A stretch of 64,000 bases of DNA from Thalia democratica (lineage: Eukaryota), in the NCBI GenBank assembly GCA_965202585.1, contig OZ241826.1, forward strand, positions 41,230,001 through 41,294,000, written 5' to 3'. Shown one piece after another: positions 30 to 61,687 of this stretch. Both the position numbers and the translations under genes were made by a program. Every line of letters starts with the position of its first letter. Position 1 is the first letter of the stretch. Below the pieces are notes generated by a model, which ran no database searches, was not told where the DNA came from, and saw nothing but the letters and a program-made list of their open reading frames with translations.

Positions 30-3000
30 ATGCGGTCGATACTAGACCCGTTCAGCGACTTTGATAACTTCAACTCTAAAAAGTGCTCGGCCCTAGGGAA
101 AAGTATTCGGACTGAAAAAAGCTGTAAAATCGTAAAAGAGCAAAAACAGCAGGAGGACGAGTTTGCTGTGAGGAAAATGTACGCGGAGGTTTTCAAGCCT
201 GACGAGCCTGTTTCTATGCTGCGGAAAGCAAACTGCAACGACAGGCTTGCTAAACAAAAAGCGAACAGGGCAAGCTGTGACAGCGATGCGCTCAATTGCA
301 CTGACAAATATGTAAAGGTTAAAGGCTTCGATAGCTTTCTGTGCGGAGAAAACAACATGCACAAAGCAGACGTTGAAAAGAAATGCAAAAAAAGCAGTTT
401 TGATAACAGAAAAACTGCTTGCACTTCTAGATTTGTTCCCAAAGAAACTTCTAAGCTTCTGCAAAGCTGCACCGCTCCAAACGAAGACGAGTTCGATCAG
501 ATGCTGAGAAAAATGGAAGACTGCGTGAACCAGTTAAGCTGCAGGATCGGCAGCAACGAGCCCAAGGCGAAGGCAAAAGGCAAGATATTAGAAGCGATGA
601 AGGACGTGATACGAAAGGCGAATCAGGTAAAAGAGATGCAAAGAAGGTGCGAAGAGAGCAGTGAAAGTTCGGTGTCTCAAGAAGAATGTTCGAAATGCAA
701 AAAGGGCAGCTGTAGCAAGATGGATCACTTGAACAGTTTGCTGAAGGAAGCCATGCAGGTTGCCGATTCGGAGGAAAACGTGGACGAGGAGAGGTGGAGG
801 AAAGTCAGGAAGAATCTGAGGGAAAATAGGAGAGATATCGAAAAAAAGTATGAAAAGAGAAAAAACAGGCAGGACTGTGAAGAAGAAAACAAGCCTGACT
901 TCAAAGAACTGTACCAATTAGTAATGAAGCAAAAACGAGGTAATATTAAAAGTTACGAGAGCAAAGAAGTTGTAACTAAAAAGAGTGTGACAAGCATCGG
1001 TGCCCTTTCAATCAAGAGTGAAACGAGTGTCACAATCAAGAAAAAGTTTATAAAAACTGGTGCCAAGCCGAAGGTACAATCGTGTCTGAAAGAAGAAGAA
1101 CCAGATTATAAGGCATTGTATGAGAGTTTAAAAAAGCAAATTGATAACCAAAACGGAGCTTGCGTGAGCCGTGGAGTGGTGGAAGAGTCCAGCTCTTCTT
1201 CCGATTCAAGTTTTAAATCAAACTGTGAGTTATGTTCTAATTTAGTTTCTGAACCATTATCTAAAATAAACTCTCAGTCATGTTCCAAATTAAGCTCTGA
1301 ATCAAGTACTAAGTTAAGTTCTCGGTCACGTTCCGAGTTAAGTTCTGAATCTACCGCCGATACAACTTCTGAAAGTACTGTTTCTGAAAAAAGTTTCGAG
1401 TCTACTAAACAAACTTCTACTAGTCAAAAAAATAACTTTTTACTTTGTAATCAGAATGATAAAAATAACCCAAAAGTTGAGAAGACTAATTGTGATTTAA
1501 AAATTTCGAACAACAGTTTTATGAGTGGTAATCAAGTTTCTTGTGACCAAAGTGAAAGCTGCAAAACTCAGCAAATAAATAGTAAAAACTGCAAAGTTAA
1601 CACTGATACTTTTCAGGTAAATAATGAAACAACTGCAAAAATAAATGAACAAAAGCCTTGTAACCAGAAGGTTTCTAAACAAACTCCAAGTAAGAATATT
1701 TCAACTTGTAAACCGATTTCAAAAGAAACTCCTTCAAAGAAAGTTTCATCTTCTCAGCCGAAATGTAAACAAACTTCTTATAATAAATTTTCACCTTCTG
1801 AGCAAACTTCTAAAGAAAGTCTATCAAAGAAAGTTTCTTCTAATCAACAGGTTTCTAAACAAGCTCCTAGTAAGGATATTTGTGCTTGTCAGTCAATTTC
1901 CAGGCTAGTTTCTTGTGAAAAAATGTCTCCTTGTAAGCATGGTTGTAGGCAATTATCTTGTAAAAAAGTTTCACCTTGTCAGAAAACGCGTCCATGTGAA
2001 ACACAAGAAGAGACGTTCTTTAACGTACTTTATTCAAATTTAAAAGCTCTGTTAGAAGATTTATGTTTGGATGAAAATGCAAGCTGCGAGACTTGCGAAG
2101 TTGTCAACGAATGCTGCAGAACTGACAATGATTGTTTTCCGGTTAAAAGTGTAACGTGTGTGAAGTCAACACATACAATTTGCTCCGAAGAAAAAGCAAA
2201 CTGCTGTGTTGCTCCAGTCGAAAGCTGTAAAAGCCGAGAAATTGTAGTCAAATGCAGCAGAGTTTGCGTTGAGTCAATTTCCAGCGATAGTGTTTTCAAT
2301 GTAGCTGAATGCTTAAAAAAGACTTGCGCTATCAGCAAAGTTCAACCTTGTGATCAAAAAGGTAAGCACCAGTCATGTGTGAAAAAAAGCAACTGTGAAA
2401 TTGATATTGCTTGCAAACCTTGCAAAAGTAAAGATGTGTCTTCTGCATGTGTTCAGAATGACAAGATTGCGAGTTGCATAGAGAAAACAAACTGCAGTAT
2501 AATTACTACTTGCAAAAGTAAAGATGCATCTGCCTGCGATCAAAATCATGTTTGCGAAACTCGTCAAAATTCTGAAAAATGTTCTGAAAAAGATAACACT
2601 TCGACGAGCAGTGAAACGACTGTCAGGAGAAAGCTGAACAGCAGAAAGAAAAACAAGATACTGCAGGCGTGGAAGCAAAACTACGAGCGGAGGCCTTGTT
2701 CTGAGAGCACGCAGTCTGACCTGCTCACTGAAAAGAAACCTCGTCGGCAGGTCTGCAAACCCTGTGAGTTACGAACATCAAGGACAGCACTCGTTCGACG
2801 GAAGCAAAAACCTTGCACTGAAGATAAACTCTCAGCCTTTAATGTCATCTATACAAACGTTAAAGGATGCGCAAGTCGAGCTAAAAGCTGTAAAAGCCGT
2901 GGAATGGTCGTTAAAAAAAGCAGTGCGAGATGCCATCAAAAGTCAGAAGTTGCCGTTTGCAAGATTGGGAGCAAACGAGTTTGCGCAAAACCGCAAGTTT

Positions 3001-3470
3001 TGACCTGCCAAACAGTACAAGAAAGTAGCTGCAGCCAAAAAAGTTGTGAATCAAAAACCAGTTTGTGCGAGATAATACCAGAAGAAGACTGTTGCAGCCA
3101 AACAAGATGCGACGTAACATGCGATGACGCCAACGAAGGTTATTATGACGTGTTGGGCAAGGTGTCCGGCTTCATAGGCATGTGGTCGGTGTGGTGCGGC
3201 AGGCTGAACGATTTTGTCGGCGTGAAACGTTCCTGCGAGGAACAACTCGAACGTTCCTGCGAGGAAAAATTTGGCAGCAACCGCCAGTCCTATTCCGAGT
3301 TATCGGTTTTCCGCATCCACAAATCTCACCGTCCGAACTTGCAGCGAAAGTCATCGGAGAGCGTGGATGATTTTTTGCGCTCGGTGGAAAAGGACTTGGA
3401 GATGAAGCAGAACCGGCTGGTTGAAATGCTCGTGAAGGAAAATCGTAGAAAAAAAGGATTATTAAAATAA
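30..3470 (+). CDS. Large intronless Lys/Ser/Cys/Glu-rich low-complexity protein (>=1146 aa), function unknown; probably 5'-truncated by the window edge
   Basis: 3.4-kb stop-free frame in a very AT-rich background, with clearly higher GC (sampled 60-nt lines at 48-60% near both ends). The frame is also open from position 3 to the ATG (KYKENIYKD-M), so the true start may lie upstream. Contains internal repeated motifs and heptad-like helical segments. AATAAA at 3466-3471 and 3560-3565. Confidence 0.85.
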   Translation: MRSILDPFSDFDNFNSKKCSALGKSIRTEKSCKIVKEQKQQEDEFAVRKMYAEVFKPDEPVSMLRKANCNDRLAKQKANRASCDSDALNCTDKYVKVKGFDSFLCGENNMHKADVEKKCKKSSFDNRKTACTSRFVPKETSKLLQSCTAPNEDEFDQMLRKMEDCVNQLSCRIGSNEPKAKAKGKILEAMKDVIRKANQVKEMQRRCEESSESSVSQEECSKCKKGSCSKMDHLNSLLKEAMQVADSEENVDEERWRKVRKNLRENRRDIEKKYEKRKNRQDCEEENKPDFKELYQLVMKQKRGNIKSYESKEVVTKKSVTSIGALSIKSETSVTIKKKFIKTGAKPKVQSCLKEEEPDYKALYESLKKQIDNQNGACVSRGVVEESSSSSDSSFKSNCELCSNLVSEPLSKINSQSCSKLSSESSTKLSSRSRSELSSESTADTTSESTVSEKSFESTKQTSTSQKNNFLLCNQNDKNNPKVEKTNCDLKISNNSFMSGNQVSCDQSESCKTQQINSKNCKVNTDTFQVNNETTAKINEQKPCNQKVSKQTPSKNISTCKPISKETPSKKVSSSQPKCKQTSYNKFSPSEQTSKESLSKKVSSNQQVSKQAPSKDICACQSISRLVSCEKMSPCKHGCRQLSCKKVSPCQKTRPCETQEETFFNVLYSNLKALLEDLCLDENASCETCEVVNECCRTDNDCFPVKSVTCVKSTHTICSEEKANCCVAPVESCKSREIVVKCSRVCVESISSDSVFNVAECLKKTCAISKVQPCDQKGKHQSCVKKSNCEIDIACKPCKSKDVSSACVQNDKIASCIEKTNCSIITTCKSKDASACDQNHVCETRQNSEKCSEKDNTSTSSETTVRRKLNSRKKNKILQAWKQNYERRPCSESTQSDLLTEKKPRRQVCKPCELRTSRTALVRRKQKPCTEDKLSAFNVIYTNVKGCASRAKSCKSRGMVVKKSSARCHQKSEVAVCKIGSKRVCAKPQVLTCQTVQESSCSQKSCESKTSLCEIIPEEDCCSQTRCDVTCDDANEGYYDVLGKVSGFIGMWSVWCGRLNDFVGVKRSCEEQLERSCEEKFGSNRQSYSELSVFRIHKSHRPNLQRKSSESVDDFLRSVEKDLEMKQNRLVEMLVKENRRKKGLLK
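1665..1979 (+). repeat. Seven tandem 45-bp (15-aa) degenerate coding repeats
   Basis: QKVSKQTPSKNISTC / KPISKETPSKKVSSS / QPKCKQTSYNKFSPS / EQTSKESLSKKVSSN / QQVSKQAPSKDICAC / QSISRLVSCEKMSPC / KHGCRQLSCKKVSPC, read directly from the ORF. Confidence 0.85.
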
Positions 3471-26672: not shown

Positions 26673-29600
26673 ATGTTCCTAAATTCGACAGAAGCTTCGC
26701 TTGAAGAAATTTCACTAAACATTGTTGGAGGTGGTGTGAGAAACATTGAAATAGTCCAGTATGATGACCCAACGCAGTTGGAAGGAACGTACCGTTTCAC
26801 ACAAACAGTGGAAAGAGTGTTAGATAACGGAGAAGAGATTTTTGTGAGCGAAACTGTTTGGCTTGGAAACGAACGTCTCCGTAGTATTGAAAGGCACCCT
26901 CCGGAAAATCCCCGCCTTCCATTCTGTCAAAACGACGACCATGAGTCGGAAGTTCGAACAATTAAAAAATTTTGCAGACCAGTGGTCTTTTGTAGCTATG
27001 AAGCTTATGAAAAATGTGCAAACAAGTCTTTTTCAGCTTGTGATAGCTGCAGGTTTGACTTAGTTTAGAAAATATTACAAGTTTGTTTTCGAACGGCTAT
27101 AAGGTTTATTTAAAATAAATATTAGAAAATTAAAACTAATGATGTTAACAGCAAAGGAGTTTTTTCTTTCACATTGTTTATCATACTATTACTTGGGCTG
27201 TTGATTGTTACAGGAAATTTGTCATACCTATTTTATTTATTGAAGAAAAAGAAATGCTTTTCCACGTTTTCACTACTTCAAAGTTTTTCTATTTGTGCAG
27301 ATGTTTTGACTGGTAGTACTTTACTGTTATTCATTTTTAAGTCAAAATAAACAAGTAATGTTTTTTTTTTCAGGTTTATTCGTTTTTGCTGTATTTCTTC
27401 CTAACTTTACTTCTACGTATTACGGAACTGCGACGCAATTGTTTGAATACGTCATGTTACAACGAAACAGTAGCAGTGCTAATTTTCAAGGAATATTGTT
27501 TATATTTGTTTTTCTGGCAAATTTCTATTTGTTGAAAACGATTAGCGTATTAAAATTGGTTTCAATTTGCTTTCCTTGGGTGAATATATCGAAGAAAAGG
27601 ATTTTAATACTAGCACTGGCAACTTTGATGTTTTCCTTGGCTATTCCGATCTTATTTTGTAAGTTCCTTTCAACTAAGTGGTTTTCGCTGTTCTTAATGC
27701 TGATAAAAAGTTTCACAATATACGTTTAATAATGATACAGCAAAAATATAATTAAGATAAAGTTACTTTAATCTAATTGTTCTCGAAGTACAGGTAAAAA
27801 GTTATTAAATAAACAAAGATATATAAAAATAAACTGCCGGTTTTTTTTTAATTTCGAAGGAACTTTAATTGCAAATAATAAAATTTATATTAATCTATTG
27901 TGTTGCACAGAAACAACTACTTTGTTCATATTTTTTGCATATCTTTCATATACTTTAAGATAAAAAATAATTTAGTTTATTCTTTTTAAATGTATGAATA
28001 GTTGTATACTGTATAATGATTACTGTTAGTCAGTTTATAACGCGTTTAAAACAATATCGAGCTTTTGTTATACATTACACAACCTATAATACTACAAAAC
28101 AGAAAACTTAATCAAAATAAAAAAGTTTAACTACTTTGTACAAAATTTATCTATTATGGTATTTGATTACAAACTTGTAAACAAACTTTTGCTTTTCTAA
28201 CGTGACTAGCAAATTAGAATGAATGTATAGTATAGCTTTTGACAGCGAAAGTTTACACAGAAACAACAAAAAAAAATTTAAAGTAGTTTTATATATGTAA
28301 GTAAAACTATTCATCGTTAATCAAGAAAAAATTTGTGAAATACTTTGTTAAATTTGTGTAAACACTAATTATAACTTCGATAAGAGAAAAACTAAATACA
28401 ATAACAAGTTTTTAATGCTATATTTGTAAAATAAAAATAAAAATTATTTTTACAGTAAATTTTCCAAAGGACATTCAATTTTCTTATCAATACGACTATT
28501 TCATTTTCTTTATTGAAATCCTACCGAATTCAATTGTTGTTAAAACTTCCATTTTTCTTCTACTTTTTATCGTTATAATTCCTTACGTTATTATGGTTAG
28601 TTTTATTAAATATTTTAACTTTAATATTTATCAAAGTAATCAAAAAAAAAAAAAAAATTACAAGCTTCGAATCAATAACTTACTTAACTTTTTACAATGC
28701 TAAGATTAAAACAAACAAAGTAATAATTACATAATTCCTGTAAAGTTTTATAGTTTGTAAAACAATAGTATAGCCTAACTTTATAAAATAATTTTTATAA
28801 TAATTTTAGTTTACAAATTGAGCTTAAATAATCTTTTTAAAACTTTAAAGTAGTATGTTTAAAATATTAAAGTTCTCCAAACATAAGAACATTCACGAAT
28901 TTAAGTATGTAAGTAAGTAAATTGTTAAGTATTTATATTTTATAACAAAAAAAAATGTTCAAGATACAAGTTTTGAGAAACTTTATACTAAATAAAGCTA
29001 TACTTGTTTTTAGGTTTTAGAAAACGTATACACTAATTTAACAAACATACTTTGTTATAGGCTTTTATAAACATTTGTACCATAAATAAAAACAAAATAA
29101 AAGCTGTCTAAAATTAAGTATTTTGAAATTATCATTTTAAATACTGGATTTTACGGTTTTTGAGACCAATTTAATTTAGAGTAAACTATAGTTTTTTTAT
29201 GTTTATCTAAGCAGTTTGCTTTTATTTTACTCAATTCGTAGGTACTTGCTACAATCGCATTGTACATAGTTATAAGGAACAAGTTCAAACAGTCCCGAAA
29301 ATTAACAAAACAAAGTAACAAAATAAATGCTATGGAAAGAAAAGTCGCAGTGAAAATATCACTAATGGTCTTGGCGTTCACTGTAACCACATGTTAGTCT
29401 TTGTTTGTTTATATACAAAGAGTATCTACAGATTTGATATTTTATAAATTTACAGTGCCTTTCATGATTTCTGTAATAGTTGAGAACAACAAAAAGAGTT
29501 GTGTAACTAAAACAAACCATTTGTTTAGAACTTTCTACTTGTTTTTTGCTAGAAGGTTAGTTTATAGTTTTAATTTTTTTGTTTGAATAAACATTAACAC

Positions 29601-29909
29601 CTACTTTTAAACTGAAACTTAAAAAGTATAAAAAGTTTAATTCAACTTTGGTAAATTTAAAAATATTTAAAATATTTTTTGTTAAAAAAAAATCATTTAG
29701 CTTTTTGTTTACTAAAAATTGTCGAAGTAATGTTTTAAACACTAAAAAAAACTTATGAGTTTTAAACAAATAACATGTTTGAGATTAAAAAATCTATATT
29801 GTATATTACATGTTTTATTGTTTACAGCCTTATGAATGCAGTAATATACATTGCAACCGACTCGAAATACAGGAAAACCATCAGAAAAGCACTAAAAAAA
29901 TGTTTTTAA
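26673..29909 (+). CDS. Atypical rhodopsin-like (class A) 7TM receptor, paralog 1, 432 aa, 7 exons
   Basis: Exons 26673-27052, 27152-27312, 27374-27658, 28456-28595, 29242-29392, 29456-29555, 29828-29909; all GT-AG, phases 2,1,1,0,1,2, total 1299 nt. Motifs: TM1 LLIVTGN, TM2 SICADVLTG, TM3 TISVLKLVSICFP, TM4 FSLAIP, TM5 IIPY, TM6 ERKVAVKISLMVLAFTVTTLP, TM7 LMNAVIY, helix 8 DSKYRK. Confidence 0.9.
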
Positions 29910-32216
29910 CTTAAAGTTAATTAATATCTACTTGTAACATTTGTGAAAGTGGTTTTGTATAAATTTTAAGTTTATACTTAGTTATATTTATAGAAGCTTG
30001 GTAATAAGTAAAACTCTAATTTAAAAGAGTATGTAAAATTTGTATCATCTGTCATAAAAGTTTGAAGAAAAAAAAATATTTAAATGTTTATGATTGTAAA
30101 GTAGAACTACGCTATAGTTAATTTAACTTTATGTTTAAAAGGTTTTATCGTTTACCTGTATTAAGCATTTACACATGAGATTTATAAAAGCTATACCTTA
30201 ATAATGTTTGAAATAAAAAAATATCCTTTTTGCTTGTATTTAAGGTTTTGTTCATTGACGTTTAAACAAAAAGAGAGTACTAATTTGCTGACTTTATTTT
30301 TGTTTTTAAGTTAAGGAGTCAGTTTTTTAAAACCTTTTAGTACATTGGTATAACTTTACTTCGTTATCAATGAAAAAAGAAAGTCTCTTTTTCTTACAAT
30401 ATCTTTACTATATTAAACAATACCCCTATACAAAATAGTTATTAAATCTAAATATATTTTTTGATGTACTGAATTACTTAAACTTAGTTAATTTTTTATG
30501 ATTGGAAATCAGTTTAAAACAAGCAACAATAAATTAAACTTTTAATCTGTTTAACAAACTAAACAAAAACAAAAATTGTAAAATAATTAAAAAGTCTTGA
30601 TTTGTTGGTAGTACATTAAAGACTTGTAATAAAATATTTTCAACTATTTGTTTTTACTTTTTTAAAATTACAGCATGTTTTCTTGTTTTGATGTTTTATT
30701 TAAACTTAAACTGTTAAATATATCACAAAATAAAAATTTTAAAGAATAATTTTGGAAAAAAAATATGCTAAAATTTAAATTAATTACTTTTGACACAAAA
30801 CTTACAAGCAGTAAATAACTTGCCGTTCTCTATATAAAAGTCTGTAGGATATATTTTTATGTGAAGAATACTTATATGCAAATACACTGTTGCATCAGTT
30901 AAACTATACACTACAAATTATTCAATTTTCTTGCAACAGTTTCACTGTTTTAATAGCTTTTCGAGTCGATATATAACTAAATTTTTAGACTTTATTTTAT
31001 CTATTTTTAAATGATGATAATTTAGGTAGAATATAAATAAATAAGTTAAAGTTAGCTAAGACGTTTACTAAAACTAAACGTAAACATATCAGTAAACAAT
31101 GATAATACTAAGATTACAGTAGTGGAAAAAACGGCATAACAAACTGGTTGAATTCTTTAAAAATCCTTAAACCTTGTTTGTAGAATTCAATACAGCTACT
31201 TTTAACCAAAGTATAATTAAAAGCACAGTTAAGAATTTTAGTTTACAAAAAGTTTTAGACAGACTTATAATAAAGATAAAAATTCAATACTACCTAAATG
31301 TTAATCATAATTTCTTTATAAAAACTTAAATTTTAATAAATTTAATCAAAAACTATTCTTTTAAACTTAAACTTTTAAAATCAAAAAACTAAAATTTAAA
31401 ACAAGTATTTATTGTTAATTCGTTTGTTCTAGCTTTATAAAAAGTTTATAACCTTTAAATATAACTTTTTTTAAGCTTATCAAAGTAATGTAGGTCAAAA
31501 TTTTATGGAAGATATTGTTTTTTTCAATTTTTCGTGAATTTTTGATTTTTCCTGTACCCTTTCGAAGCATCGTTAGTCACGGGTTAAAGCACATTAAAGC
31601 ACGGGTCAGCAGCCTATTAATTCCATTAAAAAAAAATCTAATCCTGTAGTGTGAAAAGACTTCGAATAAGTAATCGTGTTTACGCTACTTACTTTGTTTA
31701 AATTCTGGAAAAAATTGAAGCATAGACTGTTGCCGTTAGTGCGACTATAAAAAAAAGACGGTAGTTTACGTAGTTTAATTGTATATATTTTGTTTTTAAT
31801 AAGACGATTAATTAAAATGTTATCAAAGACGTTTGCAACAACTGTAGCAAAAGATAAAGCATTTAAAAACAAACACAAAATTTATAAGTTAAATCAAATT
31901 AAATATACTATACATTAGTGTGAAGTTTATATTTTTGTCGCTTCCCATAATAACAATTTTCAGTTTTTAGTACGTACAGACTTTTTATTGTGAAATAAAT
32001 CTTTTATACTATTTTATTTTTAAATGTCAGAAAACTTCAGATAGCTACAATCAGCTTTAAGTGAATAATAAAGTATACATGTGATAGATCGAAAAGGTTT
32101 GTTTTATCATTTCAAATTAAAATAAGTATTTTATTATTGCTAAATAATGTTCAAAAAGTATAAGTAAGAGTCAATGTTTGTTTTTAAGTAAAAAAGTAGA
32201 GCAAAAAATAAACTAT

Positions 32217-32700
32217 AAAGTATTAAAAATATGGCAGCAAAAGATCACCAATGAGGAAGTATTGAGACGTACTGGTCTTACCACTATGTACTTTACCCTC
32301 AATCAGCGCAGGCTTCGCTGGCTCGGTCATATCCTGAGAATGAATACTGAGCGGATCCCAAAGTTTCTATTGTATGGCGAGTTGGTCGTTGGCAAACGAA
32401 ACCGAGGACGTCCAAAATTACGTTTTAAGGATGTATGCAAGCGCGACCTAAAAAGCTTGAACATTGGAACTGATGATTGGGAGTTGCTTGCAAATGACCG
32501 TGCCAAATGGAGATCAACTATACACAAAAGACTGCAAGAAAGAGAACTGGAATATTTTAGAAAAACGAAGAAGAAGATGAAGAAATAAGAAGCAGAATGA
32601 ATTTAATTGTTTTTTTTTTAAACATGTAATTTTTTTTTTTTTCTTCTCTGTGCACAACACGCATAGCCGATCTCGGCTGATAGCGGGCCTTATTATTATA
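32217..32700 (+). mobile_element. RTE-clade LINE, 5'-truncated 3' fragment
   Basis: WQQKITNEEVLRRTG...RRLRWLGHILRM...RIPK.LLYGEL..GKR.RGRPKLRFKDVCKRDLK is the typical RTE/BovB-like ORF C-terminus. Stop at 32588, then a GC hairpin (AGCCGA..TCGGCT) and a (TAT)n tail. Possible TSD tattaaaaa. Confidence 0.88.
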
Positions 32701-37007: not shown

Positions 37008-40000
37008 ATGAGTCCTTATTTCACTGAAACTTCATTTGCCTATGCCACACCTGCAGTTTTGGTAGCAAAAGGTGGTGTTGAAAACAAAAATGTAGAACCT
37101 TGGGAAGAAAAAACAGATTTTTACGAAAAATATCCAATACGTCTTGGACAATTTTTTCAAAATTTTCTACCAGTAGCACCTGCAGATTTTATTGCTAAAA
37201 TTGAAACAAATGTAACAGAAGTACTTCGCAACAACTCTACTAATGCAACTTCTAATGAGATAAAAGTTGAAAATAACACTACTTTGAAAACTTTCACCAG
37301 CGTCAACAACGTTTATCAAGAATCGCAAAACACTCTAGGTTTTAAATTGTGCCGACCAGTAGTTTTTTGTGATTATGAAGCTTACGAAAACTGTTGGAAC
37401 AAATCTTTTTCAACTTGTGAAAACTGCAGGTAAAAATATATTTATTTTTAATTTTCAGAGTAGGTTTACTTAGTAAGATTGTAGCTTTGACAGAGGATCG
37501 TCAGCTACGTTAATTATTATTTTTTTCTTTTTGTTTATCAATCTATTTTAATTCTATCTCTGTATAGAAATTTTTTTTTTAATTCAATTTAAACTGGTCT
37601 TACCAACAGCAAAGGAGTATTTTCTTTTACATTGTTTATTATCTTACTACTTGGGGTGTTGATTGTTGTTGGAAATATGTCATACCTATTTTATCTGATG
37701 AAGAAAAAGAAAAACTTTTCGACGTTTTCTCTACTTCAGAGTTTTTCCACATGTGCTGATACTTTGACTGGTAATATTAAGTATCTTAAAAATAATCGAA
37801 TTTAACCTATACTAATAATAAGTACTTTTTGCAGGACTATTCATATTCGGTGTCTTTCTCCCTAACTTTACTTCCACGTATAATGAAACTGCGTTGCAAT
37901 TGTATAAATACTTTCAAGAACAACAAAAAAGTAGTAGTGCTTACTTTCAAGGAATATTGTTTATCTTCATTTTTCTGACTAATTTTTATTTATTGAAACT
38001 GATAAGTGTGGTAAAATTGGTAAATATTTATTTCGAATGGACAAACATATCAAAGAAAGCGATTATAATCCTAGCTTTAGCGACTTCAAGTTTTTCCTTG
38101 GCAATACCTATCTTATTCTGTTAGTCATTAGCAATTTAATTTCTTAGTAAACAAAAAAGAACGCACTTGACACTGTTTGTTATTTATATTTTGATTAAAA
38201 ATTTAATGGAACTTTTTTAATTGTAGTATACTCAGAACAACTTATTCTTAAACTATCGTAACTTTATAGTACAAGTGTATAACAATTTAGTGTATTTTAG
38301 TAGCAAGTAAAATTATAGACATTAAACTTTGAATATATTTGTTTTATTATTAAATTTCAATTTATCTAGTAAAAAAACAGTACTTTTGAAAAATTAAAAT
38401 TGCTAGCAGACATAGTTATCTAAAGTTAATTAGTATAAAGTTTGTTTTATGATACTTTTTGCAGATATCTAGTTAAGCAGTGTTAAAAGCATAGTTAAAT
38501 TTAAACTCAATTTCGTAAGTAGCTGCTGTAGACGCAATTAACTTAATAATTAGTAAGTACAATACAAAACTTAATATCTTGGGAACGGGTCACTTTTGCA
38601 CGAGCGTCACTTTTGCACGAAGGGTCACTTTTGCACGAGGGGACACTTTTGCACGGCGACTCTTTTGCACGAGCGACACTTTAGCACGAAGGGACACTTT
38701 TGCACGGCGTCACTTTTGCACGCAGGGTCACTTTTGCACGAGGGGACACTTTTGCACGGCGACTCTTTTGCACGAGCGTCACTTTAGCACGAAGGGACAC
38801 TTTTGCACGGCGTCACTTTTGCACGGAGGGTCACTTTTGCACGAAGGACACTTTTGCACGGCGTCACTTTTGCACGGTCGTCACTTTTGCATGGCGACAT
38901 TTTTACACGTCAAAACTTTTGCACGACGTTACATTTGCATGACGACATTTTTGCAAAGCGTCACTTTCGCACGGCGTTATAATTTCACGGGTATACTTAT
39001 GAACTGTAAAATTTTAAATAATCAGTCAATTTTGAACGGAACTTCACTTTTGCACGCTTCTTATTTTTTTTTCTCAAATAAAAATATGAATAGATTTTTT
39101 TTTGTCAATTTAAATAATATTCGCTTTTAAACGCAAGTTGTTTTGAATCAATAAAATGTTGTAGTGTTTTAATGAAATTTTAATGTAAAGTTTTTATGAA
39201 ACTATTGTTGCAAAAATTTATTTTACAAACTAAGTTTCGGTCTAATACCTCGTCAGTGCTTAAATAAATTTCTTAAATAAAAGTTTTTATGTTAAGTTTT
39301 ACGGACAACAATATAATTACGTACCACAATTCATTTATTCATATTTATAATCTTAATCAAAATAAACTGGAGAATAACAAACAATTTTGAATAATTTAAA
39401 TAAAAATTATCTGAATCTCGTTAAATTTTAAAGAGAAAGATAACCTTAATTTAGTAAGACTTTGAAACACGAATCTTGAGTATTATTTTTTAATAATATT
39501 CTCTTGATGTTAAAATTAGCAATATATAGTTGTTAAACAAATGGTTAAAATTTATTTCAATTTTAAACGATTGTTAAAATAAAACAAAAGATTTAGTTAA
39601 TTTTTGAATTGTAAAGGTATTTCAGATTTTACTTGACGTTTATTTTTCAGTCTATTTTTAAATTTAGCGTGAGAATATAAAGAGCAATAAAATGATTTGA
39701 ACTTGGATTATTTCAGCATTATAACTTTGCATGATCATGATAAGCCAAAGAGAAAGTAACATTTGGAAGTTTGAACTTATGTTAAAAGAAAATATACAAT
39801 ATTAGTCTTCAACTGCTGCAACATTTCAATAATAAGGCTTGGCAGAATTTTTTTTTTATCGGTCAGTTGAAATATGGAACAAACTTACAAATGAATTAGT
39901 TTCTTGCAAAAATTTTAAAGAATTTCGATTGAAGTTAAAATCTTTTTATCAAAATTATATTTGTGTTAATAAAATTAACAAGTAATTTTTATCAACCGTT

Positions 40001-42643
40001 GATTTAATTTTAAGATTAAGCTTAGTTTATAATTCAATTTATTATATTAGCAGCACCTTTACTCTAATAATAATGAGTCCTTATTCAATGTATTTAATGA
40101 TTACTCATCTAGCCAGTCTATTTTTAATGTCCTTGGAGCGTTAGGTTTTTATTTTTGTTGTTAATCAATGCGTTTAAATATTTGACGTTCATCGTTCTAC
40201 ATCAAAGCGTAAATAAGTATAAGTTTGTGCTTAACATTTTGCTTTTTATGTTAACCTATAAGTTTTATATCAAACTATGTTTTAATCTTTGTTTTAATAA
40301 ATAAACTTCTTGTATTAATTTTATTTTTTTATTATGTTTCTTTCAGTTTAAGTGGTCTAGGTTTTGATGCCTAAATCCATCATATGGATAATAAACTTGT
40401 AACTGTGTAGTAAAATATATAATATGACATAGTTGTTGACTAATATATTAAAGTTCAAAATAAACTAGAACAACTTACTTACACTAAAAGTATTTTTTAT
40501 CCTAGTTTCTAAATTAATTATTTTTTTTTGTCCCTGGTTTGAATTTTTTATAAATGATTAAAATTTATTTTTCCTTAGTTTGTTTCTAACATTAACTTTT
40601 ACTGTTTAAGATTTTAAATCTTTCATTTTTTGCCTTTAATATAGGTATGTTAAAAATTTGGTACTAGCTAAAGAACTTTTTACCAAAATTAAAAATTAAT
40701 GTTCCGTGCGAAAAAATCATTGTGCCAAAATGTCGCTAGGCAAAATCTTCATCGTAAAAATGTGACATTGTGCAAAAGTACCGTTGTGCAACAATGCTGC
40801 CGTAACAAATGTCGCCGTGCAGAAGTGTCTCCTAGTGCGAAAATAACGCCGTGCAAAATGACCCTGCGTGCAAAAGTGACGCCGTGCAAAAGTGTCTCTT
40901 CGTGCAAAAGTGACCCTCCGTGCAAAAGAGTCGCCGTGCAAAAGTGTCCCCTCGTGCAAAAGTGACCCTACGTGCAAAAGTGACGCCGTGCAAAAGTGTC
41001 CCCTCGTGCAAAAGTGACCCTGCGTGCAAAAGAGTCGCCGTGCAAAAGTGTCCCCTCGTGCAAAAGTGACCCTACGTGCAAAAGTGACGCCGTGCAAAAG
41101 TGTCCCCTCGTGCAAAAGTAACCCTGCGTGCAAAAGTGACGCCGTGCAAAAGTGTCCCTTCGTGCTAAAGTGACGCTCGTGCAAAAGAGTCGCCGTGCAA
41201 AAGTGTCCCCTCGTGCAAAAGTGACCCTTCGTGCAAAAGTGACAGTCGTGCAAAAGTGTCCCTTCGTTCAAAAGTGACGCTCGTGCAAAAGTGACACCCA
41301 CCCTAATATCTTAGTTAACATTAAGGAATAAAAATATAAACTTTACAGCATTATTTCCATATTCCATTCAGTTTTCCTATCAATTTGACATTTTTATATT
41401 CTGGATAGAAGTTTTACCAATTTCCAAAGTGAAAAACATTTATTTAATTATTCTATTTTTAACTGTCATAATTCCTTATATGATTATGGTTAGTTTGTAA
41501 AAACTACTACCTTCTCTACAACATATACTTTTATTTTTATAAACTATCTTTTTAGTTTTTTAACTCTACTAACTCTTAATTTTTCATTTTAACTTCAAAA
41601 TTTAAATAAACAAAAAAAATATCAGCGTAATGAATAATTATTTAATTAAAAATAAAAATAAAGCTTATATTTAGTTTAAAGTTTTAGTAAATATTTGATT
41701 AGGCACAAAAGGCTATTTACTTTTAAAACAGAGTTTTTAAAAATAAATGTGCTACAAAACTATTCAGTAAGTGTGAATTCATTCTTTAAATTTTATTCAG
41801 ATAAACAAATATATAAGTACAACAAACTCCTATGAAAATTTTATTGTCTATTTAGTTGTGTACTAAAGTAGATCAATGTTTTTTTTAATTATTAATCTAA
41901 GGTGTTTGCAACAATTGGAGTCTACCTAGTTGTAAGGCAAAAATTCAAAAGTTCACGAAAACTGACAAAGCAAACTAAATTAATAAATGCTATGGAAAGA
42001 AAAGTTGCATTAAAAATATCATTAATGGTTGTTGCTTTTTCTGTAACTACACGTTAGTCTTTAATTGTCTGTCTGTAACAGTGTATACTCTGAAATGTGT
42101 TTTAATTTACAGTACCTTTCATGATATCTGTAATAGTTGAACACAACAAAGGTGGATGCATAACAAAAACGAACCACGTGTTTGTGACGTTTTACTTGTT
42201 TTTCGCCAGAAGGTTGGTTTGCATTTTTCTTTCGATTAGTATTTTGTGTTTAGTTCTCATATATATTAAATACTTAACTTTAGTATAAAACAGTATTTTA
42301 TTTTAGAATACTAGTTGAATAATTTCAAAAAATTTAATTGAATTATGAATAATGTTATTAAGGTTTTTACAAATATATGAAGCAAATAGATATTTTGTTT
42401 ATTATATAATATTATTTAACAGTTTATTCGACAAATAGTTTTTAAATACTTGGCATACTTAATGTAGAATATTTTAGTAAAGTATCGGTTTGTTAAACCC
42501 AATGCTTTCTACGTGATATGCAGTTTTTTATTTTAATATATGTAGTTATTTTATTCAGCCTCATGAATGCAGTAATATACATTGCAACAGACTCGAAGTA
42601 CAGGAAGTTCATAAAGAAGTCATTCAGATATTTATTCAACTAA
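37008..42643 (+). CDS. Atypical rhodopsin-like 7TM receptor, paralog 2, 447 aa, 7 exons
   Basis: Exons 37008-37429, 37610-37770, 37835-38119, 41349-41488, 41902-42052, 42113-42212, 42559-42643; 1344 nt, no internal stops. Same phases and internal exon lengths (161, 285, 140, 151, 100) as paralog 1. Confidence 0.9.
38581..38995 (+). repeat. Left modular TIR: tandem G(T/A)C(A/T)CTTTTGCACG-n units
   Basis: About 24 units of 16-18 bp, degenerating inward. Confidence 0.9.
39690..40305 (+). mobile_element. CR1/L2-type LINE 3' fragment carried inside the foldback element
   Basis: FFFYRSVEIWNKLTNELVSCKNFKEFRLKLKS (about 39848-39945) matches the FF..R.V..WN.L...VV......F+..L C-terminal motif of CR1/L2 RT proteins. 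The upstream part has stops. An AATAAATAAA tail-like end lies at about 40300. Confidence 0.6.
40700..41303 (-). repeat. Right modular TIR (inverted relative to the left arm)
   Basis: Tandem CGTGCAAAAG(T/A)G(A/T)C units; longer array than the left arm. Confidence 0.9.
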
Positions 42644-50240: not shown

Positions 50241-53123
50241 ATGAGTCCTTATTCCACTGAAACTTCATTTGCCACACCTGCAATTTTAGTAGCAAAAGGT
50301 GGTGTTGAAAACGTAGAACCTTGGGGAGAAAAGACATATTTAAATATAAAACAACCAACAAATCCTGAATTATTTTTTCAAAACTCTGTACCATTCGCAC
50401 CTGCGGATTTTATTGCTAAAATTAAAATAAATGTAACAGAAGTACTTCGCAACAACTCTACTAATGCAACTTCTAATGAGATAAAAGTTGAAAACTTTCA
50501 CCAGCGTCAACAACGTTTATCAGGAATCGCAAAACACTCTAGGTTTTAAATTGTGCCGACCAGTAGTTTTTTGTGATTATGAAGCTTACGAAAATTGTTG
50601 GAACGAATCTTTTTCAACTTGTGAAAACTGCAGGTAAAAATATATTTATTTTTAATTTTCAGAGTAGGTTTACTTAGTAAGATTGTAGCTTTGATAGAGG
50701 ATCGTCAGCTACGTTATTTATTTATTTTTCTTTTTGTTTATCAATCTATTTTAATTCTATCTCTGTTTCAATTTTTTTTCAAATTTAATTTAAACTGGTC
50801 TTACCAACAGCAAAGGAGTATTTTCTTTCACATTGTTTATTATCTTATTACTCGGGGTGTTGAATGTTGTTGGAAATATGTCATACCTAATTTATCTGAT
50901 GAAGAAAAAGAAAAACTTTTCGACGTTTTCTCTACTTCAGAGTTTTTCCGCATGTGCAGATACTTTGACTGGTAATATTAAGTATCTTAAAAATAATCGA
51001 ATTTAACCTATACTAATAATAAGTACTTTTTGCAGGACTATTCATATTCGGTGTCTTTCTCCCTAACTTTACTTCCACGTATAATGAAACTGCGTTGCAA
51101 TTGTATAAACACTTTCAAGAACAACAAAAAAGTAGTAGTGCTTACTTTCAAGGAATATTGTTTATCTTTATTTTTCTGACTAATTTTTATTTATTGAAAC
51201 TAATAAGTGTGGTAAAATTGGTAAATATTTATTTCGAATGGACAAACATATCAAAGAAAGCGATTATAATCCTAGCTTTAGCGACTTCAAGTTTTTCCTT
51301 GGCAATACCTATCTTATTTTGTTAGTGGTTAGCAATTTAATTTCTTAGTAAACAAAAAACAACGTACTTGACACTGTTTGTTATTTATATTTTGATTAAA
51401 AATTTAATGGAACTTTTTTAATTGTAGTATACTCAGAACAATTCATTCTTAAACTAACGTAACTTTATAGTACAAGTGTACAACAATTTAGTGTATTTTA
51501 GTAGCAAGTAAAATTGTAGACATTAAATTTTGAATATATTTGTTTTATTATTAAATTTCAATTTATCTAGTAAAAAAACAGTACTTTTAAAAAATTAAAA
51601 TTGCTAGCAGATATAGTTATCTAAAGTAAATTTGTATAAAGTTTGTTTTATGATACTTTTTGGAGATATCTAGTTAAGCAGTGTTAAAAGCATAGTTAAA
51701 TTTAAACTCAATTCTGAAGTAGCTGCTGTAGACGCAATTAACTTAATAATTAGTAAGTACAATACAAAATTTAACATCTTAGTTAACATAAAGGAATAAA
51801 AATATAAACTTTACAGCATTCTTTCCACATTCCATTCAGTTTACATATCAATTTGACATTTTCATATTCTGGATAGAAGTTTTACCAAATTCCCAAGTGA
51901 AAAACATTTATTTCATTATTCTATTTTTAACTGTCATAATTCCTTATATGATTATGGTTAGTTTGTAAAAACTACTACCTTCTCTACAACATATACTTTT
52001 ATTTTTATAAACTATCTTTTTAGTTTTTTAACTCTACTAACTTTAAATTTTTCATTTTAACTTCAAAATTTAAATGAACAAAAAACTATCAGCTTAATGA
52101 ATAATTATTTAATTGAAAAAAAAAAAACTTATATTTAGTTTAAAGTTTTAGTAAAAATTTGATTAGGCTCAAAAGGCTATTTACTTTTAAAACAGAGTTT
52201 TTTAAAATAAATGTGTTACAAAACTATTCAGTAAGTGTGAAAAATTTCTTTAAAATTCATTCTTTAAATTTTATTCAGATAAAAAAGTATATTAAGTACA
52301 ACAAACTCCTATGAAAATTTATTGTCTATTTAGTTGTGTACTGAAGTAGATCAATGTTTTTTTAATTATTAATCTAAGGTATTGGCAACTATTGGAGTCT
52401 ACTTAGTTGTAAGGCACAAATTCAAAAGTTCACAAAAACTGACAAAGCAAACTAAATTAATAAATGCTATGGAAAGAAAAGTTGCATTAAAAATATCATT
52501 AATGGTTGTTGCTTTTTCTGTAACTACACGTTAGTCTTTAATGGTCTGTCTGTAACAGTGTATACTCTGAAATGTGTTTTAATTTACAGTACCTTTCATG
52601 ATTTCAGTAATAGTTGAACACAACAAAGGTGGATGCATAACAAAAACAAACCACGTGTTTGTGACGTTTTACTTATTTTTCGCCAGAAGGTTGGTTTGCA
52701 CTTTTTCTTTCGATTAGTATTTTGTGTTTTTAGTTCTCATATATATTAAATGCTTAACTTTAGTATAAAACAGTATTTTATTTTAGAATACTAGTTGAAT
52801 AATTTCAAAAAAATTAATTTAATTATAAATAATGTTATTAAGGTATTTACAAATATATGAAGCAAATAGATATTTTGTTTATTATATAATATTATTTAAC
52901 AGTTTATTCGACAAATAGTTTTAAAAAACTTGGCATATTTAATATAGAATATTTTAGTAAAATATCAGTTTGTTAAACCCAATGCTTTCTACGTGATATG
53001 CAGTTTTTTATTTTAATATATGTAATTATTTTTTTCAGCCTCATGAATGCAGTAATATACATTGCAACAGACTCGAAGTACAGGAAGTTCATAAGAAAGT
53101 TTTTCAGATATTTATTCAACTAA
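50241..53123 (+). pseudogene. 7TM receptor paralog 3, frameshifted in exon 1
   Basis: Exons 50241-50633, 50811-50971, 51036-51320, 51817-51956, 52379-52529, 52590-52689, 53039-53123. Exon 1 is 393 nt (phase 0 instead of 2) because of a 17-nt deletion at 50494/50495; premature TAA at 50547-50549. Exons 2-7 and all splice sites are intact. Confidence 0.85.
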
Positions 53124-59383: not shown

Positions 59384-61687
59384 ATGACAAAAATATTTCC
59401 GAGAAATTTTACAGAAAAAGATTTTCAAAACAAAAGAAACGAAATTGTTGGTAAACCAGAAAAGGCGGGTGTATACTACGTTAGAAATTTCTATCAAGTT
59501 TCACAAAATAAATCGGATTACAATTTGTGCAGACCGATAGTTTTCTGTGAATATGAAGCTTATGAAAAGTGCGCAAACAAATCTTTTTCAACTTGTGAAA
59601 GCTGCAGGTGGTATTAAATAGTTTGAAGTAACAAAATGTGTAAAATTTAATTTTAATAAGAAAATCAAACTTTAAATATAATTGTCTGAGACTATAACTT
59701 GAAGAAAATAAAATTTGCTTTTAATTACCTTCATAGATCATTTTAAAATTTTTGAATTTAAAAATTTAAAGTTAAATAGTTAAACATTGTTACCTACAGC
59801 AAGGGAACATTTGCATTTACGTTATTTATCATACTGTTACTTGGAACATTGATTGTAGTAGGAAACGTGTCATACTTGCTCTACTTGCTCAAGAAAAAGA
59901 AACACTTTTCGCCTTTTTCACTGCTTCAGTGTTTCTCCACATCTGCGGATATTTTGACAGGTAATGTTTTATACAAAGTTTTCAATTTTTTTTTACGTAA
60001 ACAAACTTTAAATAACAGGTTTTTTTATATTCACCGTATTTGTTCCTAGCTTCATCATTACTTATAATGGAACTGGGTCGGAATTGTTAAGTTTTGTCAA
60101 AAATCAACAACAAAGCAACAGTGCTAAACTTCGAGGAATGCTGTTTGTTTTTGTCTTTCTGGCAAACTTTTATTTGTTGAAATTGATCAGTGTGGTAAAG
60201 TTGCTCACAATTCGCTTTGAGTGGATAAATATGTCAAAGAAAAGAGTTGTAGTACTGGCTTTGGCAACTTTGGCATTTTCCTTGGCTATACCGGTCTTGT
60301 TTTGTAAGTTATAATCGTAAGTTTTCTAAAAATTGTTCTTTTTTTTTCAAAAGTTACAAACTTATAGTTAAACCATGGTACAACAGTCAGACTAAATTAA
60401 AAGACTTTATTTGTTTATTTTTCTTCTTAAGATTTGAGTATATACTCTTGTTTTTATTTGACAGTATAATTTGTGTTTCTCTACAGTACTTTTTCCAAAT
60501 TCAATTCGATTTTCATATCAATACGACTTTTTTATTTTCTGGTTTGAAATTCTACCGAATTCAAATGTTGAAGTTATTTCTCTTATGGTTTCAATTTTCA
60601 TAGTGATGATTCCCTACGTAATAATGGTTAGAGCTTTAACACTTCTTTTTATTAAAAAACTTATTTATTTAAAATTTATAAACAATCTCCTTTAACATTT
60701 CTTTATTTTTACCAACTTATTTCTATAAAAAAAAAAACAGCTATATTCCAAAATACTAAGTAAAATATATGTCAAGCACGTTTTAGCTGAAAATTTTAAC
60801 CAGCGCTACCTACACGGTATCATATAATAAACTTTAAAGACATGTTGATAATGTTTAGTTCTTTAGGTTTTGAAAAATGTTTTGGCCTCTGGTTGTTTCT
60901 AAATAACTTGTTGTATTTACTTATTTTTACTCAATATGCAGGTATTTGCCACAATTGGAGTTTACGCAGTTGTTCGGCACAAGTTCAAAAACTCTAGAAA
61001 ACTTTCAAACCAAGTAAATATAATAAACAAAATGGAAAAAAGAATCGCAATCAAAATATCTTTACTGGTTGTAGCGTTTTCAGTAACTACATGTTAGTTT
61101 ATTTATTGCTCGACATAACACACTTTATATTATATTTTTATATAACAGTGCCATTTGTGATCACTGTACTAGTTGAAAACAGCAAGGAAAGTTGTGACAC
61201 AAGAGCAAACCATATGTTTGTGACGTTCTACATATTTTTCTCTAGAAGGTCGGTTTACTGTATTTAATTTTTTTTTAATCCAACGTAAATTAAATTAAGT
61301 ATTAAGACTTGTGCTAACTGTACAAGCATCACAACAAAAAGTTGTTGTGTTTTACATTATTTAAACTTAAGTTTTCGATTATGGCAATGCTTATTTCAAA
61401 TAAAAATTAAGTAATTCTTAACTACAAAAATTTCAACAACTATAAGCTGAAAAATACTAAGTAAAAGTAGTTGTAAAACTAACTTTAGAATGATTTTTTA
61501 ATATAAGTTAAACTTTCTAAAGTTTGTTCAAATCATGTCAAAATTAACGCTTAAAATAACCATTAATTTTAATTACAGCCTTGTGAATGCTGGAATATAC
61601 ATTGCAACTGACTGGAAGTACAGAAAGTCCATCCAAAAAAGTTTAAAGAAATTGTTTATTTTAAACCATCAACTATTTAACGTTTAA
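59384..61687 (+). CDS. Atypical rhodopsin-like 7TM receptor, paralog 4, 389 aa, 7 exons
   Basis: Exons 59384-59607, 59800-59960, 60019-60303, 60487-60626, 60942-61092, 61149-61248, 61579-61687; 1170 nt, same phases. An in-frame stop upstream of the ATG supports this start. TM7 reads LVNAGIY. Confidence 0.9.

What the first reader, a model, noticed from the sequence alone, without database searches (positions are those of the whole stretch)
26973..27050. Conserved 5-Cys juxtamembrane cap (C-x5-C-x7-C-x7-C-x2-C) may replace the canonical GPCR disulfide
All four paralogs end exon 1 with CRP[VI]VFCxYEAYExCxN[KE]SFSxC[DE]xC directly before TM1, although the sequence upstream is barely alignable (seen). 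None has the class A Cys at the top of TM3 or a Cys in ECL2, but all keep one Cys in ECL3 (KSCV/GGCI/ESCD). Five cap Cys plus one ECL3 Cys could form three disulfides, tethering the cap over the pocket as in the N-terminus/ECL3 bond of chemokine receptors (inference). I do not recognise the motif as a named domain.
Basis: partly seen in the sequence, partly recalled or inferred. Interest (0 to 1): 0.7.

Follow-up and report, generated by a model that had tools for sequence, protein, structure and literature searches.

The report
Cysteine-knot lid on tunicate orphan receptors
Four neighbouring receptor genes of a probable open-ocean tunicate end their first exon with a conserved five-cysteine module just outside the membrane; comparison with sea-squirt relatives suggests how its cysteines pair, including one bond to the receptor's last outer loop, in a family that lacks the usual GPCR disulfide.

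Summary
C-x5-C-x7-C-x7-C-x2-C occurs four times in the window, always as the last 26 codons of exon 1 of a 7-exon class A-like 7TM gene. It sits 7 residues before TM1.

None of the genes has a Cys at the top of TM3 or in ECL2. Each has one Cys in ECL3. One copy (g3) has a 17-bp frameshifting deletion upstream of the motif.

The motif is not private to these four genes. The genome has 8 such loci, and the same module precedes TM1 in ascidian receptors from Ciona and Phallusia. One of them is ci0100154142, filed under 'Other Rhodopsins' in 2008.

Pfam, NCBIfam and PDB profile searches match no known domain. The LGR hinge and LDLa are not matched.

The main new evidence comes from 19 sequences:
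- The first cap Cys and the ECL3 Cys are present together or absent together, with two independent joint absences.
- Cap Cys 3 and 4 are absent together in a third clade.
- This implies the pairs C1-ECL3, C2-C5 and C3-C4.

AlphaFold2 models the cap with pLDDT 85-96, but no coordinates were available to measure distances.

'Replaces the canonical disulfide' is unproven, because 4-Cys members have no tether at all.

The parts
26973..27050 (+). g1 cap: 26 codons, CRPVVFCSYEAYEKCANKSFSACDSC (C1-C5). This is the finding itself.
26673..29909 (+). g1 gene, 7 exons, 432 aa: 26673-27052, 27152-27312, 27374-27658, 28456-28595, 29242-29392, 29456-29555, 29828-29909.
   Evidence: All junctions are AG/GT and the frame is open.
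29500..29502 (+). g1 ECL3 Cys codon (KSCV), the inferred partner of cap C1.
26925..26927 (+). g1-specific sixth N-terminal Cys (PFCQND), 16 residues before C1. It breaks the even Cys count in g1 only.
37350..37427 (+). g2 cap: CRPVVFCDYEAYENCWNKSFSTCENC.
37008..42643 (+). g2 gene, 447 aa: exons 37008-37429, 37610-37770, 37835-38119, 41349-41488, 41902-42052, 42113-42212, 42559-42643. ECL3 Cys codon at 42157-42159.
50554..50631 (+). g3 cap, which differs from g2's by one residue (NES in place of NKS).
50241..53123 (+). g3 gene. Exon 1 is frameshifted by a 17-bp deletion relative to g2. Exons 2-7 are intact: 50811-50971, 51036-51320, 51817-51956, 52379-52529, 52590-52689, 53039-53123. ECL3 Cys codon at 52634-52636.
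59528..59605 (+). g4 cap: CRPIVFCEYEAYEKCANKSFSTCESC.
59384..61687 (+). g4 gene, 389 aa: exons 59384-59607, 59800-59960, 60019-60303, 60487-60626, 60942-61092, 61149-61248, 61579-61687. ECL3 Cys codon at 61193-61195.

Best explanation
The 78 bases encode an extracellular, juxtamembrane cysteine-knotted mini-domain, the 'cap'. It ends exon 1 of a divergent rhodopsin-class 7TM receptor.

The receptor belongs to a small family. I found it only in tunicates: 8 loci in this genome, Ciona and Phallusia genes, and marine plankton contigs. The whole family lacks the canonical TM3-ECL2 disulfide.

Inferred mechanism:
- Four cysteines (C2-x7-C3-x7-C4-x2-C5) form two internal disulfides, C2-C5 and C3-C4.
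- These fold a short helix-plus-loop hairpin directly onto the top of TM1. The C3-C4 loop usually carries an N-glycan sequon.
- The fifth cysteine, C1, lies six residues upstream. It bonds the single Cys of ECL3, stapling the N-terminus to the TM6-TM7 loop beside TM1, as the N-terminus/ECL3 bond does in chemokine and angiotensin receptors.
- The cap thereby gives a rigid lid and anchor for the hypervariable ectodomain upstream.

Shown here: the motif, its position, its conservation, the absence of the canonical cysteines, and the pattern of joint presence and absence.
Inferred: that all the cysteines are oxidised, the pairing map, and the lid function.
For: Motif and gene models.

Family:
- A cap-profile search of the own genome finds exactly 8 loci plus 2 haplotig copies.
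- An exon-3 profile against 1.84 billion representative proteins gives only 13 hits. One is named, P0012 from Phallusia.
- Follow-up searches added four Ciona proteins carrying C-x5-C-x7-C-x7-C-x2-C before TM1.

Co-variation (alignment, census):
- Fifteen sequences have C1-C5 plus an ECL3 Cys.
- Four sequences in two separate clades lack both C1 and the ECL3 Cys. The clades are P0012 inside the ascidian clade (support 100/99) and the g8/P0006/P0016 clade (100/100).
- The three chromosome-8 paralogs lack C3 and C4 together but keep C1, C2, C5 and the ECL3 Cys.
- C1-ECL3, C2-C5, C3-C4 is the only map under which every variant keeps only whole pairs.
- Rough branch-length-weighted odds of these coincidences are 0.016 for C1/ECL3, 0.083 for C3/C4 and 0.0013 jointly.

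A prediction that was met: P0005 has an ECL3 Cys but a truncated N-terminus, so its contig should carry a 5-Cys cap upstream. It does.

Purifying selection: g5 against a related-species contig differs at 1 of 78 cap bases, a synonymous change. Introns differ by about 9-10% and exon 3 by 7%.

Structure:
- AlphaFold2 gives cap pLDDT 89-96 in Ciona P0018 and 85-90 in the 4-Cys P0016.
- Both models have a short helix after C2. DSSP marks isolated bridge residues at C2 and C5 in P0018.

Class A identity: 7tm_1 scores 2e-18 to 2.8e-7 on homologs, and Foldseek hits are all class A receptors.
Against: - No direct evidence of any disulfide. The structure tool returns no coordinates, so Cys-Cys distances could not be measured.
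- There are only two independent C1/ECL3 joint changes. The formal sign test on independent pairs gives p = 0.5.
- g1 has an extra N-terminal Cys and g6 an extra ECL1 Cys. These break the even count.
Start codons and possible upstream signal-peptide exons are unverified, and g6 and g7 have no clear ATG in exon 1.
- The 4-Cys members show that the tether is not essential.
- The exon models for the loci outside the window were joined piecewise.
Confidence: 0.6

Rival explanations
2. C1 and the ECL3 Cys are not bonded to each other. They are free, form intermolecular bonds (receptor dimers or covalent ligand capture), or are otherwise independent, and their joint absence is coincidence.
For: There are only two independent joint changes, and the sign test is not significant. 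g1 and g6 carry odd extra cysteines, so unpaired extracellular Cys are tolerated.
Against: - The association is perfect in 19 of 19 sequences across ascidians and this genome.
- The rough chance of co-location is about 0.016.
- The prediction for P0005 was met.
- TM1 and ECL3 are neighbours in the class A fold (established knowledge).
Confidence: 0.12
3. The motif is a degenerate piece of a known ectodomain module, such as the Cys boxes of an LGR/relaxin-receptor hinge, an LRR C-terminal cap or an LDLa repeat. NCBI's automatic name 'relaxin receptor 2' for the Ciona and Phallusia homologs hints at this.
For: - Automatic names given by the sources.
- Ciona has many LGR-like and LDLa-bearing receptors (PMC2396169).
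Against: - Pfam finds no Ldl_recept_a, LRR, LRRCT or GnHR_trans match on any N-terminus at E up to 10.
All GPCR matches start at TM1, and no LGR or relaxin receptor is among the best 60.
- Kamesh et al. filed ci0100154142 (= P0018) under 'Other Rhodopsins', with best human hit GPR50, and not in the LGR-like cluster.
Confidence: 0.05
4. The four core cysteines bind a metal (a zinc-knuckle-like site) rather than forming disulfides.
For: The C-x2-C element and the four invariant Cys resemble metal-binding spacings.
Against: - The module is extracellular: it directly precedes TM1 of a class A receptor and has N-glycan sequons inside it.
- The chromosome-8 clade lost exactly two of the four Cys and keeps the other two. 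That fits pairs, not a tetrahedral site.
Confidence: 0.03

Closest known systems
N-terminus/ECL3 disulfide of chemokine receptors (for example CXCR4) and the angiotensin AT1 receptor
   Same: One Cys in the N-terminus near TM1 and one Cys in ECL3, which closes the N-terminus onto the TM7 side of the pocket. Modelling work treats such N-terminus-ECL3 bonds as a recurring class A feature (PMC7652349).
   Different: Those receptors also keep the canonical TM3-ECL2 disulfide and have a single N-terminal Cys in a flexible tail. Here the canonical bond is absent, and the tethering Cys is part of a compact module with two further internal disulfides.
Class A receptors that lack the TM3-ECL2 disulfide and cap the pocket with the N-terminus: S1P1, LPA1, cannabinoid and melanocortin receptors
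   Same: The canonical bond is lost (S1P1 and LPA1: PMC7652349). The N-terminus folds over the extracellular face (own knowledge of the solved structures).
   Different: No shared cap motif. Their extra disulfides lie within ECL2 or ECL3, or link the N-terminus to ECL2. Sequence and fold searches show no special closeness: Foldseek best hits are the apelin, A2A and orexin receptors.
Ciona intestinalis ci0100154142 (XP_002125310), an 'Other Rhodopsins' orphan of Kamesh et al. 2008
   Same: It is P0018, a true homolog with the identical Cys spacing and an aligned ECL3 Cys.
   Different: It is only about 25-35% identical to the window's genes. The paper's six mentions of cysteine that I saw concern LDL-A repeats, so it does not appear to describe the cap.
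Hinge Cys boxes of LGR / glycoprotein-hormone / relaxin receptors
   Same: Cysteine-rich juxtamembrane segment directly before TM1 of a class A receptor.
   Different: No sequence match. No LRR or LDLa upstream. LGRs keep the canonical disulfide.

Membership tests
Rhodopsin-class (class A) GPCR, Pfam PF00001 7tm_1 | Match to the 7tm_1 profile above the gathering score | tested here: met
   Homologs: P0012 67.2 bits, P0019 64.3, P0018 54.8, P0006 30.7, against a cutoff of 30.5. The window's single exons are too short to score. They align along their whole length with these homologs.
Rhodopsin-class (class A) GPCR, Pfam PF00001 7tm_1 | Seven-helix class A fold | tested here: met
   AlphaFold2 models of P0018 (pTM 0.77) and P0016 (pTM 0.76). 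Foldseek finds 500 or more class A hits at probability 1.00.
Rhodopsin-class (class A) GPCR, Pfam PF00001 7tm_1 | Canonical disulfide between Cys 3.25 (top of TM3) and ECL2 | tested here: not met
   No Cys in ECL1/top of TM3 or in ECL2 in 18 of 19 family members. g6 has one ECL1 Cys.
Rhodopsin-class (class A) GPCR, Pfam PF00001 7tm_1 | Microswitch motifs: N1.50, D2.50, D/ERY, CWxP, NPxxY | tested here: inconclusive
   Read from the g1 model. G-N in TM1, D in TM2, P in TM5 and P in TM6 are present. DRY is replaced by L-K-L, CWxP by T-T-L-P and NPxxY by N-A-V-I-Y.
LGR / relaxin-receptor hinge, LRR cap or LDLa module | Profile match of the N-terminal region to Ldl_recept_a, LRR/LRRCT or GnHR_trans, or to solved LGR/RXFP chains | tested here: not met
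   No Pfam family on any N-terminus at E up to 10. PDB profile searches leave the cap columns unmatched.
Receptors with an N-terminus-ECL3 disulfide (chemokine / AT1 type) | One conserved Cys in the N-terminus and one in ECL3 | tested here: met
   C1 and the ECL3 Cys are present in 15 sequences and absent together in 4.
Receptors with an N-terminus-ECL3 disulfide (chemokine / AT1 type) | The two cysteines are actually bonded, or at least close in space | not testable with these tools
   Structure prediction returns no coordinates. Complex prediction gave no answer.
Urochordate-only neuropeptide receptor clades (Ci-LF-R, Ci-YFV-R; Shiraishi et al. 2019) | Sequence membership in the clade of KH.C4.122, KH.C2.1037, KH.C1.745 and the others | not tested
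   The receptor sequences (Dataset S3) are not held. There is only a circumstantial likeness: tunicate-restricted, and weak similarity to cannabinoid, adenosine and amine receptors.

The most novel reading that the evidence does not exclude
The cap is more than a structural staple. It would be a disulfide-locked plug whose invariant aromatic face (F-C-x-[YW]-x-[AV]-[YW]) sits in the receptor vestibule as a built-in gate or tethered ligand. The hypervariable ectodomain upstream would sense the signal and move it. The family could then be the receptors of tunicate-specific neuropeptides (LF or YFV type), with a previously undescribed activation module.
Probability: 0.1. Interest if true: 0.75.

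Novelty: new variant of a known kind. Interest (0 to 1): 0.45.

Why it matters
Extracellular disulfides shape the ligand entrance of GPCRs, and almost all class A receptors share one bond, TM3-ECL2.

This is a whole receptor family in tunicates, the closest invertebrate relatives of vertebrates, that has dropped that bond. It carries a compact, conserved cysteine module at the foot of the N-terminus instead.

Natural loss-of-pair variants give a testable disulfide map without any biochemistry. The Ciona member is cloned (cDNA AK113479 is listed in PMC2396169), so the map can be checked directly.

If the family turns out to be the receptors for tunicate-specific neuropeptides, the cap would be part of a new peptide-recognition architecture. 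Otherwise it is a tidy but lineage-restricted structural variant.

Tried and rejected
- **Complex prediction**, Ciona cap (residues 62-97) against its 7TM body (98-410): 'no answer', score 0.02. This is not evidence either way.
- **Cnidarian origin.** My first guess, from the AT-rich sequence, was a cnidarian. I dropped it because the only named homologs are ascidian and earlier notes call the genome a pelagic tunicate.
- **'Relaxin receptor 2' names.** Rejected as automatic, best-hit naming.
- **ESM Atlas look-alikes of the cap:** all scores below 0.9 and nothing informative.
- **PDB profile hits** to glycogen phosphorylase and cellobiose phosphorylase: E 0.05-0.2, cytosolic enzymes, so chance.
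- **The search for homologous proteins** is limited by query length and shared words, so it added only a few sequences.
- **Contigs of P0007 and P0011:** too short to hold a cap or ECL3.
- **L012, L036 and L038:** not cap-bearing family members.
- **Supplement of PMC6475428** with the LF/YFV receptor sequences: not held.

Full report
**1. What is at the coordinates**

Bases 26973-27050 translate to CRPVVFCSYEAYEKCANKSFSACDSC. A six-frame scan for C-x5-C-x7-C-x7-C-x2-C finds four matches and no others. All are on the + strand, at 26973, 37350, 50554 and 59528.

I built gene models by homology between the copies and by AG/GT rules. g1 has seven exons and encodes 432 aa:
- Exon 1 ends two bases after the last Cys codon.
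- The intron is phase 2.
- Exon 2 continues S-K-G-V-F-S-F and then TM1 with G-N.

The later exons carry:
- D in TM2;
- a long ECL1 with L-P-N;
- TM3 ending in L-K-L where DRY is expected;
- a Cys-free ECL2;
- I-P-Y in TM5;
- T-T-L-P in TM6;
- ECL3 with a single Cys;
- N-A-V-I-Y in TM7.

g2 and g4 have the same structure. g2's intron 3 holds a 2.7-kb insertion. g3 is a recent copy of g2 whose exon 1 has a 17-bp deletion, so the reading frame from its start codon stops before the motif.

**2. Is it a known domain?**

No.
- Pfam and NCBIfam find nothing on the exon-1 products at E up to 10.
- They find nothing on the N-termini of the Ciona homologs either.
- Profiles of the cap alone (A3, A6) against all PDB sequences give only chance hits to cytosolic phosphorylases.
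- A profile of the cap plus TM1-TM2 (A7) matches many class A receptors, but every match starts at TM1. No LGR or relaxin receptor is among the best 60.
- The ESM Atlas gave nothing above noise.

**3. How wide is the family?**

Within this genome (802 Mb), a cap search finds the four window genes and four more cap loci. Two lie on contig 2, one on contig 7 and one on contig 5. Contig C953 holds haplotig copies. Nothing else is found. An exon-3 profile also finds three paralogs on contig 8 with the same exon structure.

Outside the genome, the same exon-3 profile scored against 1.84 billion representative proteins gives only 13 hits. These are exon-sized fragments from marine assemblies and these longer proteins:
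- P0006 (445 aa) from a marine JGI assembly; its near-copies P0015 and P0016 turned up in follow-up look-ups;
- P0005, partial, from a JGI sample;
- P0012 from the ascidian Phallusia mammillata.

Follow-up searches added Ciona savignyi P0017 and Ciona intestinalis P0018-P0020.

P0018 is ci0100154142 of Kamesh et al. 2008. There it is listed under 'Other Rhodopsins', with best human hit GPR50 at 1e-06 and with EST and cDNA support (PMC2396169).

Earlier notes of this scan call the genome a pelagic tunicate. My results fit that: only ascidian named homologs, plus TARA and marine contigs. My first guess of a cnidarian was wrong.

The homologs pass 7tm_1. Foldseek places the AlphaFold2 model among ordinary class A receptors, without a close subfamily.

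**4. The cysteine pattern across the family**

This is the main result. In a MAFFT alignment of 19 sequences, the cap and the ECL3 Cys align in register from Ciona to this genome. The invariant positions are F-C2, C3, C4 and C5. The census gives three classes.

| Class | Members | Cap Cys | ECL3 Cys |
|---|---|---|---|
| a | g1-g7, P0005, P0017-P0020 | C1-C5 | present |
| b | g8 with its orthologs P0006/P0016; P0012 | C2-C5 (no C1) | absent |
| c | three contig-8 paralogs | C1, C2, C5 (no C3, C4) | present |

In class c the C2-C5 spacing is 17-19 residues, against 18 in the other classes.

None of the 19 has a Cys in ECL2. Only g6 has one in ECL1.

On a maximum-likelihood tree built without the cap and ECL3 columns, class b arises twice. 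P0012 sits inside the ascidian clade (support 100/99), and the g8 clade has support 100/100. Class c arises once (100/99).

The only pairing under which every natural variant keeps whole pairs is C1-ECL3, C2-C5, C3-C4.

One prediction was made before looking. P0005 has an ECL3 Cys but a truncated N-terminus, so a 5-Cys cap should lie upstream on its contig. It does: CTLQIFCKSSVYISCNHTSLISCQEC, followed by an intron at the same place.

How strong is this?
- The formal independent-pairs sign test has only two pairs, so p = 0.5.
- A rough branch-length-weighted estimate of the coincidences gives 0.016 for C1/ECL3, 0.083 for C3/C4 and 0.0013 jointly.
- The evidence is suggestive and internally consistent, but it is not proof.

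**5. Selection and fold**
- g5 and a contig from a related sample are 90.6% identical over 2.7 kb.
- The 78 cap bases differ at one synonymous site (1.3%). Introns differ by about 9-10%, the rest of exon 1 by 6.3% and exon 3 by 7.0%.
- A sequon N-x-[ST] two residues after C3 is kept in most members of both tunicate groups (read). This fits an exposed extracellular loop.
- AlphaFold2 with a shallow family alignment models the cap confidently. In P0018, residues 71-100 have pLDDT 89-96. In the 4-Cys P0016, residues 91-110 have pLDDT 85-90.
- Both models have a short helix after C2. In P0018, isolated bridge residues fall at C2 and C5, and ECL2 forms a beta-hairpin.
A split-chain complex test gave no answer.

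**6. Interpretation**

The best reading is a disulfide-knotted juxtamembrane lid. Two internal bonds fold it, and in most members a third bond staples it to ECL3 next to TM1.

It probably stabilises the extracellular face of a family that has no TM3-ECL2 bond. It probably also holds the very variable ectodomain in a fixed position.

'Replacement' of the canonical bond is not established. The 4-Cys members lack both the canonical bond and the tether.

Exceptions to the even count are g1's extra Cys at 26925-26927 and g6's ECL1 Cys.

Function and ligand are unknown. One lead is that Shiraishi et al. 2019 describe urochordate-only receptor clades for the Ciona LF and YFV peptides, with weak similarity to cannabinoid, adenosine and adrenergic receptors (PMC6475428). 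I could not test whether this family is one of them.

**7. Novelty**

The kind is known: class A receptors with an N-terminus/ECL3 bond, and class A receptors without the canonical bond (PMC7652349).

The module, its conservation across tunicates and the inferred three-bond map were not described in the papers I could search. The Ciona member was simply left unclassified. I rate it a new variant of a known kind, of moderate interest.

**Limits**
- The 5' ends are unverified.
- Non-window gene models were joined exon by exon.
- Taxon sampling is small.

Noticed in passing
window 50241-50633: Exon 1 of g3 has a 17-bp deletion and two 6-bp deletions relative to g2. The frame from the start codon ends at 50547-50549, before the cap. 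Exons 2-7 are intact, so g3 is probably a young pseudogene, or is spliced differently.
   Followed up: partly
window 38587-41295: Intron 3 of g2 holds a ~2.7-kb insertion. It is bounded by inverted ~400-bp arrays of a ~52-bp subrepeat, with arms up to 188 nt that are 96% complementary. It looks like a DNA transposon with subterminal repeat arrays.
   Followed up: partly
window 30-3470 (+): An uninterrupted 1146-codon ORF in the GC-richer left end of the window. It is rich in Cys, Ser and Lys with repeated short motifs, and has no Pfam match.
   Followed up: no
window 32178-32588 (+): A 136-aa ORF that resembles the C-terminal tail of a LINE-type reverse transcriptase, judged by eye. It has no Pfam hit at E 0.01.
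   Followed up: no
L002 and L005 (contig C953 of the same genome): An unplaced contig repeats g1 (cap 100% identical) and a g2/g3-like gene. That gene has its own cap variant (CEYEAYENCWNESFSTCESC) and a 1-nt insertion just after the start codon. It is probably an alternative haplotype.
   Followed up: partly
L033, L034, L035 (contig 8 of the same genome): A sister subfamily with the same exon structure has a 3-Cys N-terminus (C-x6-C-x17-19-C, then the intron) plus the ECL3 Cys.
   Followed up: yes
L015:1-795 (marine JGI contig carrying P0005): In this relative the cap is preceded by a long Ser/Thr/Pro-rich, mucin-like repeat region. Only the intron after the cap is present.
   Followed up: no
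window 27052/27152, and the same point in all family loci: The phase-2 intron directly after the last cap Cys is kept in every genomic family member examined: g1-g8, the contig-8 genes and P0005's contig. The cap is always the end of its exon.
   Followed up: partly
window 27012-27020, and the equivalent places in the other copies: An N-glycosylation sequon two residues after C3 (NKS, NES, NIS; NTT, NVT, NHT in the ascidian and plankton relatives) is conserved in most members.
   Followed up: partly
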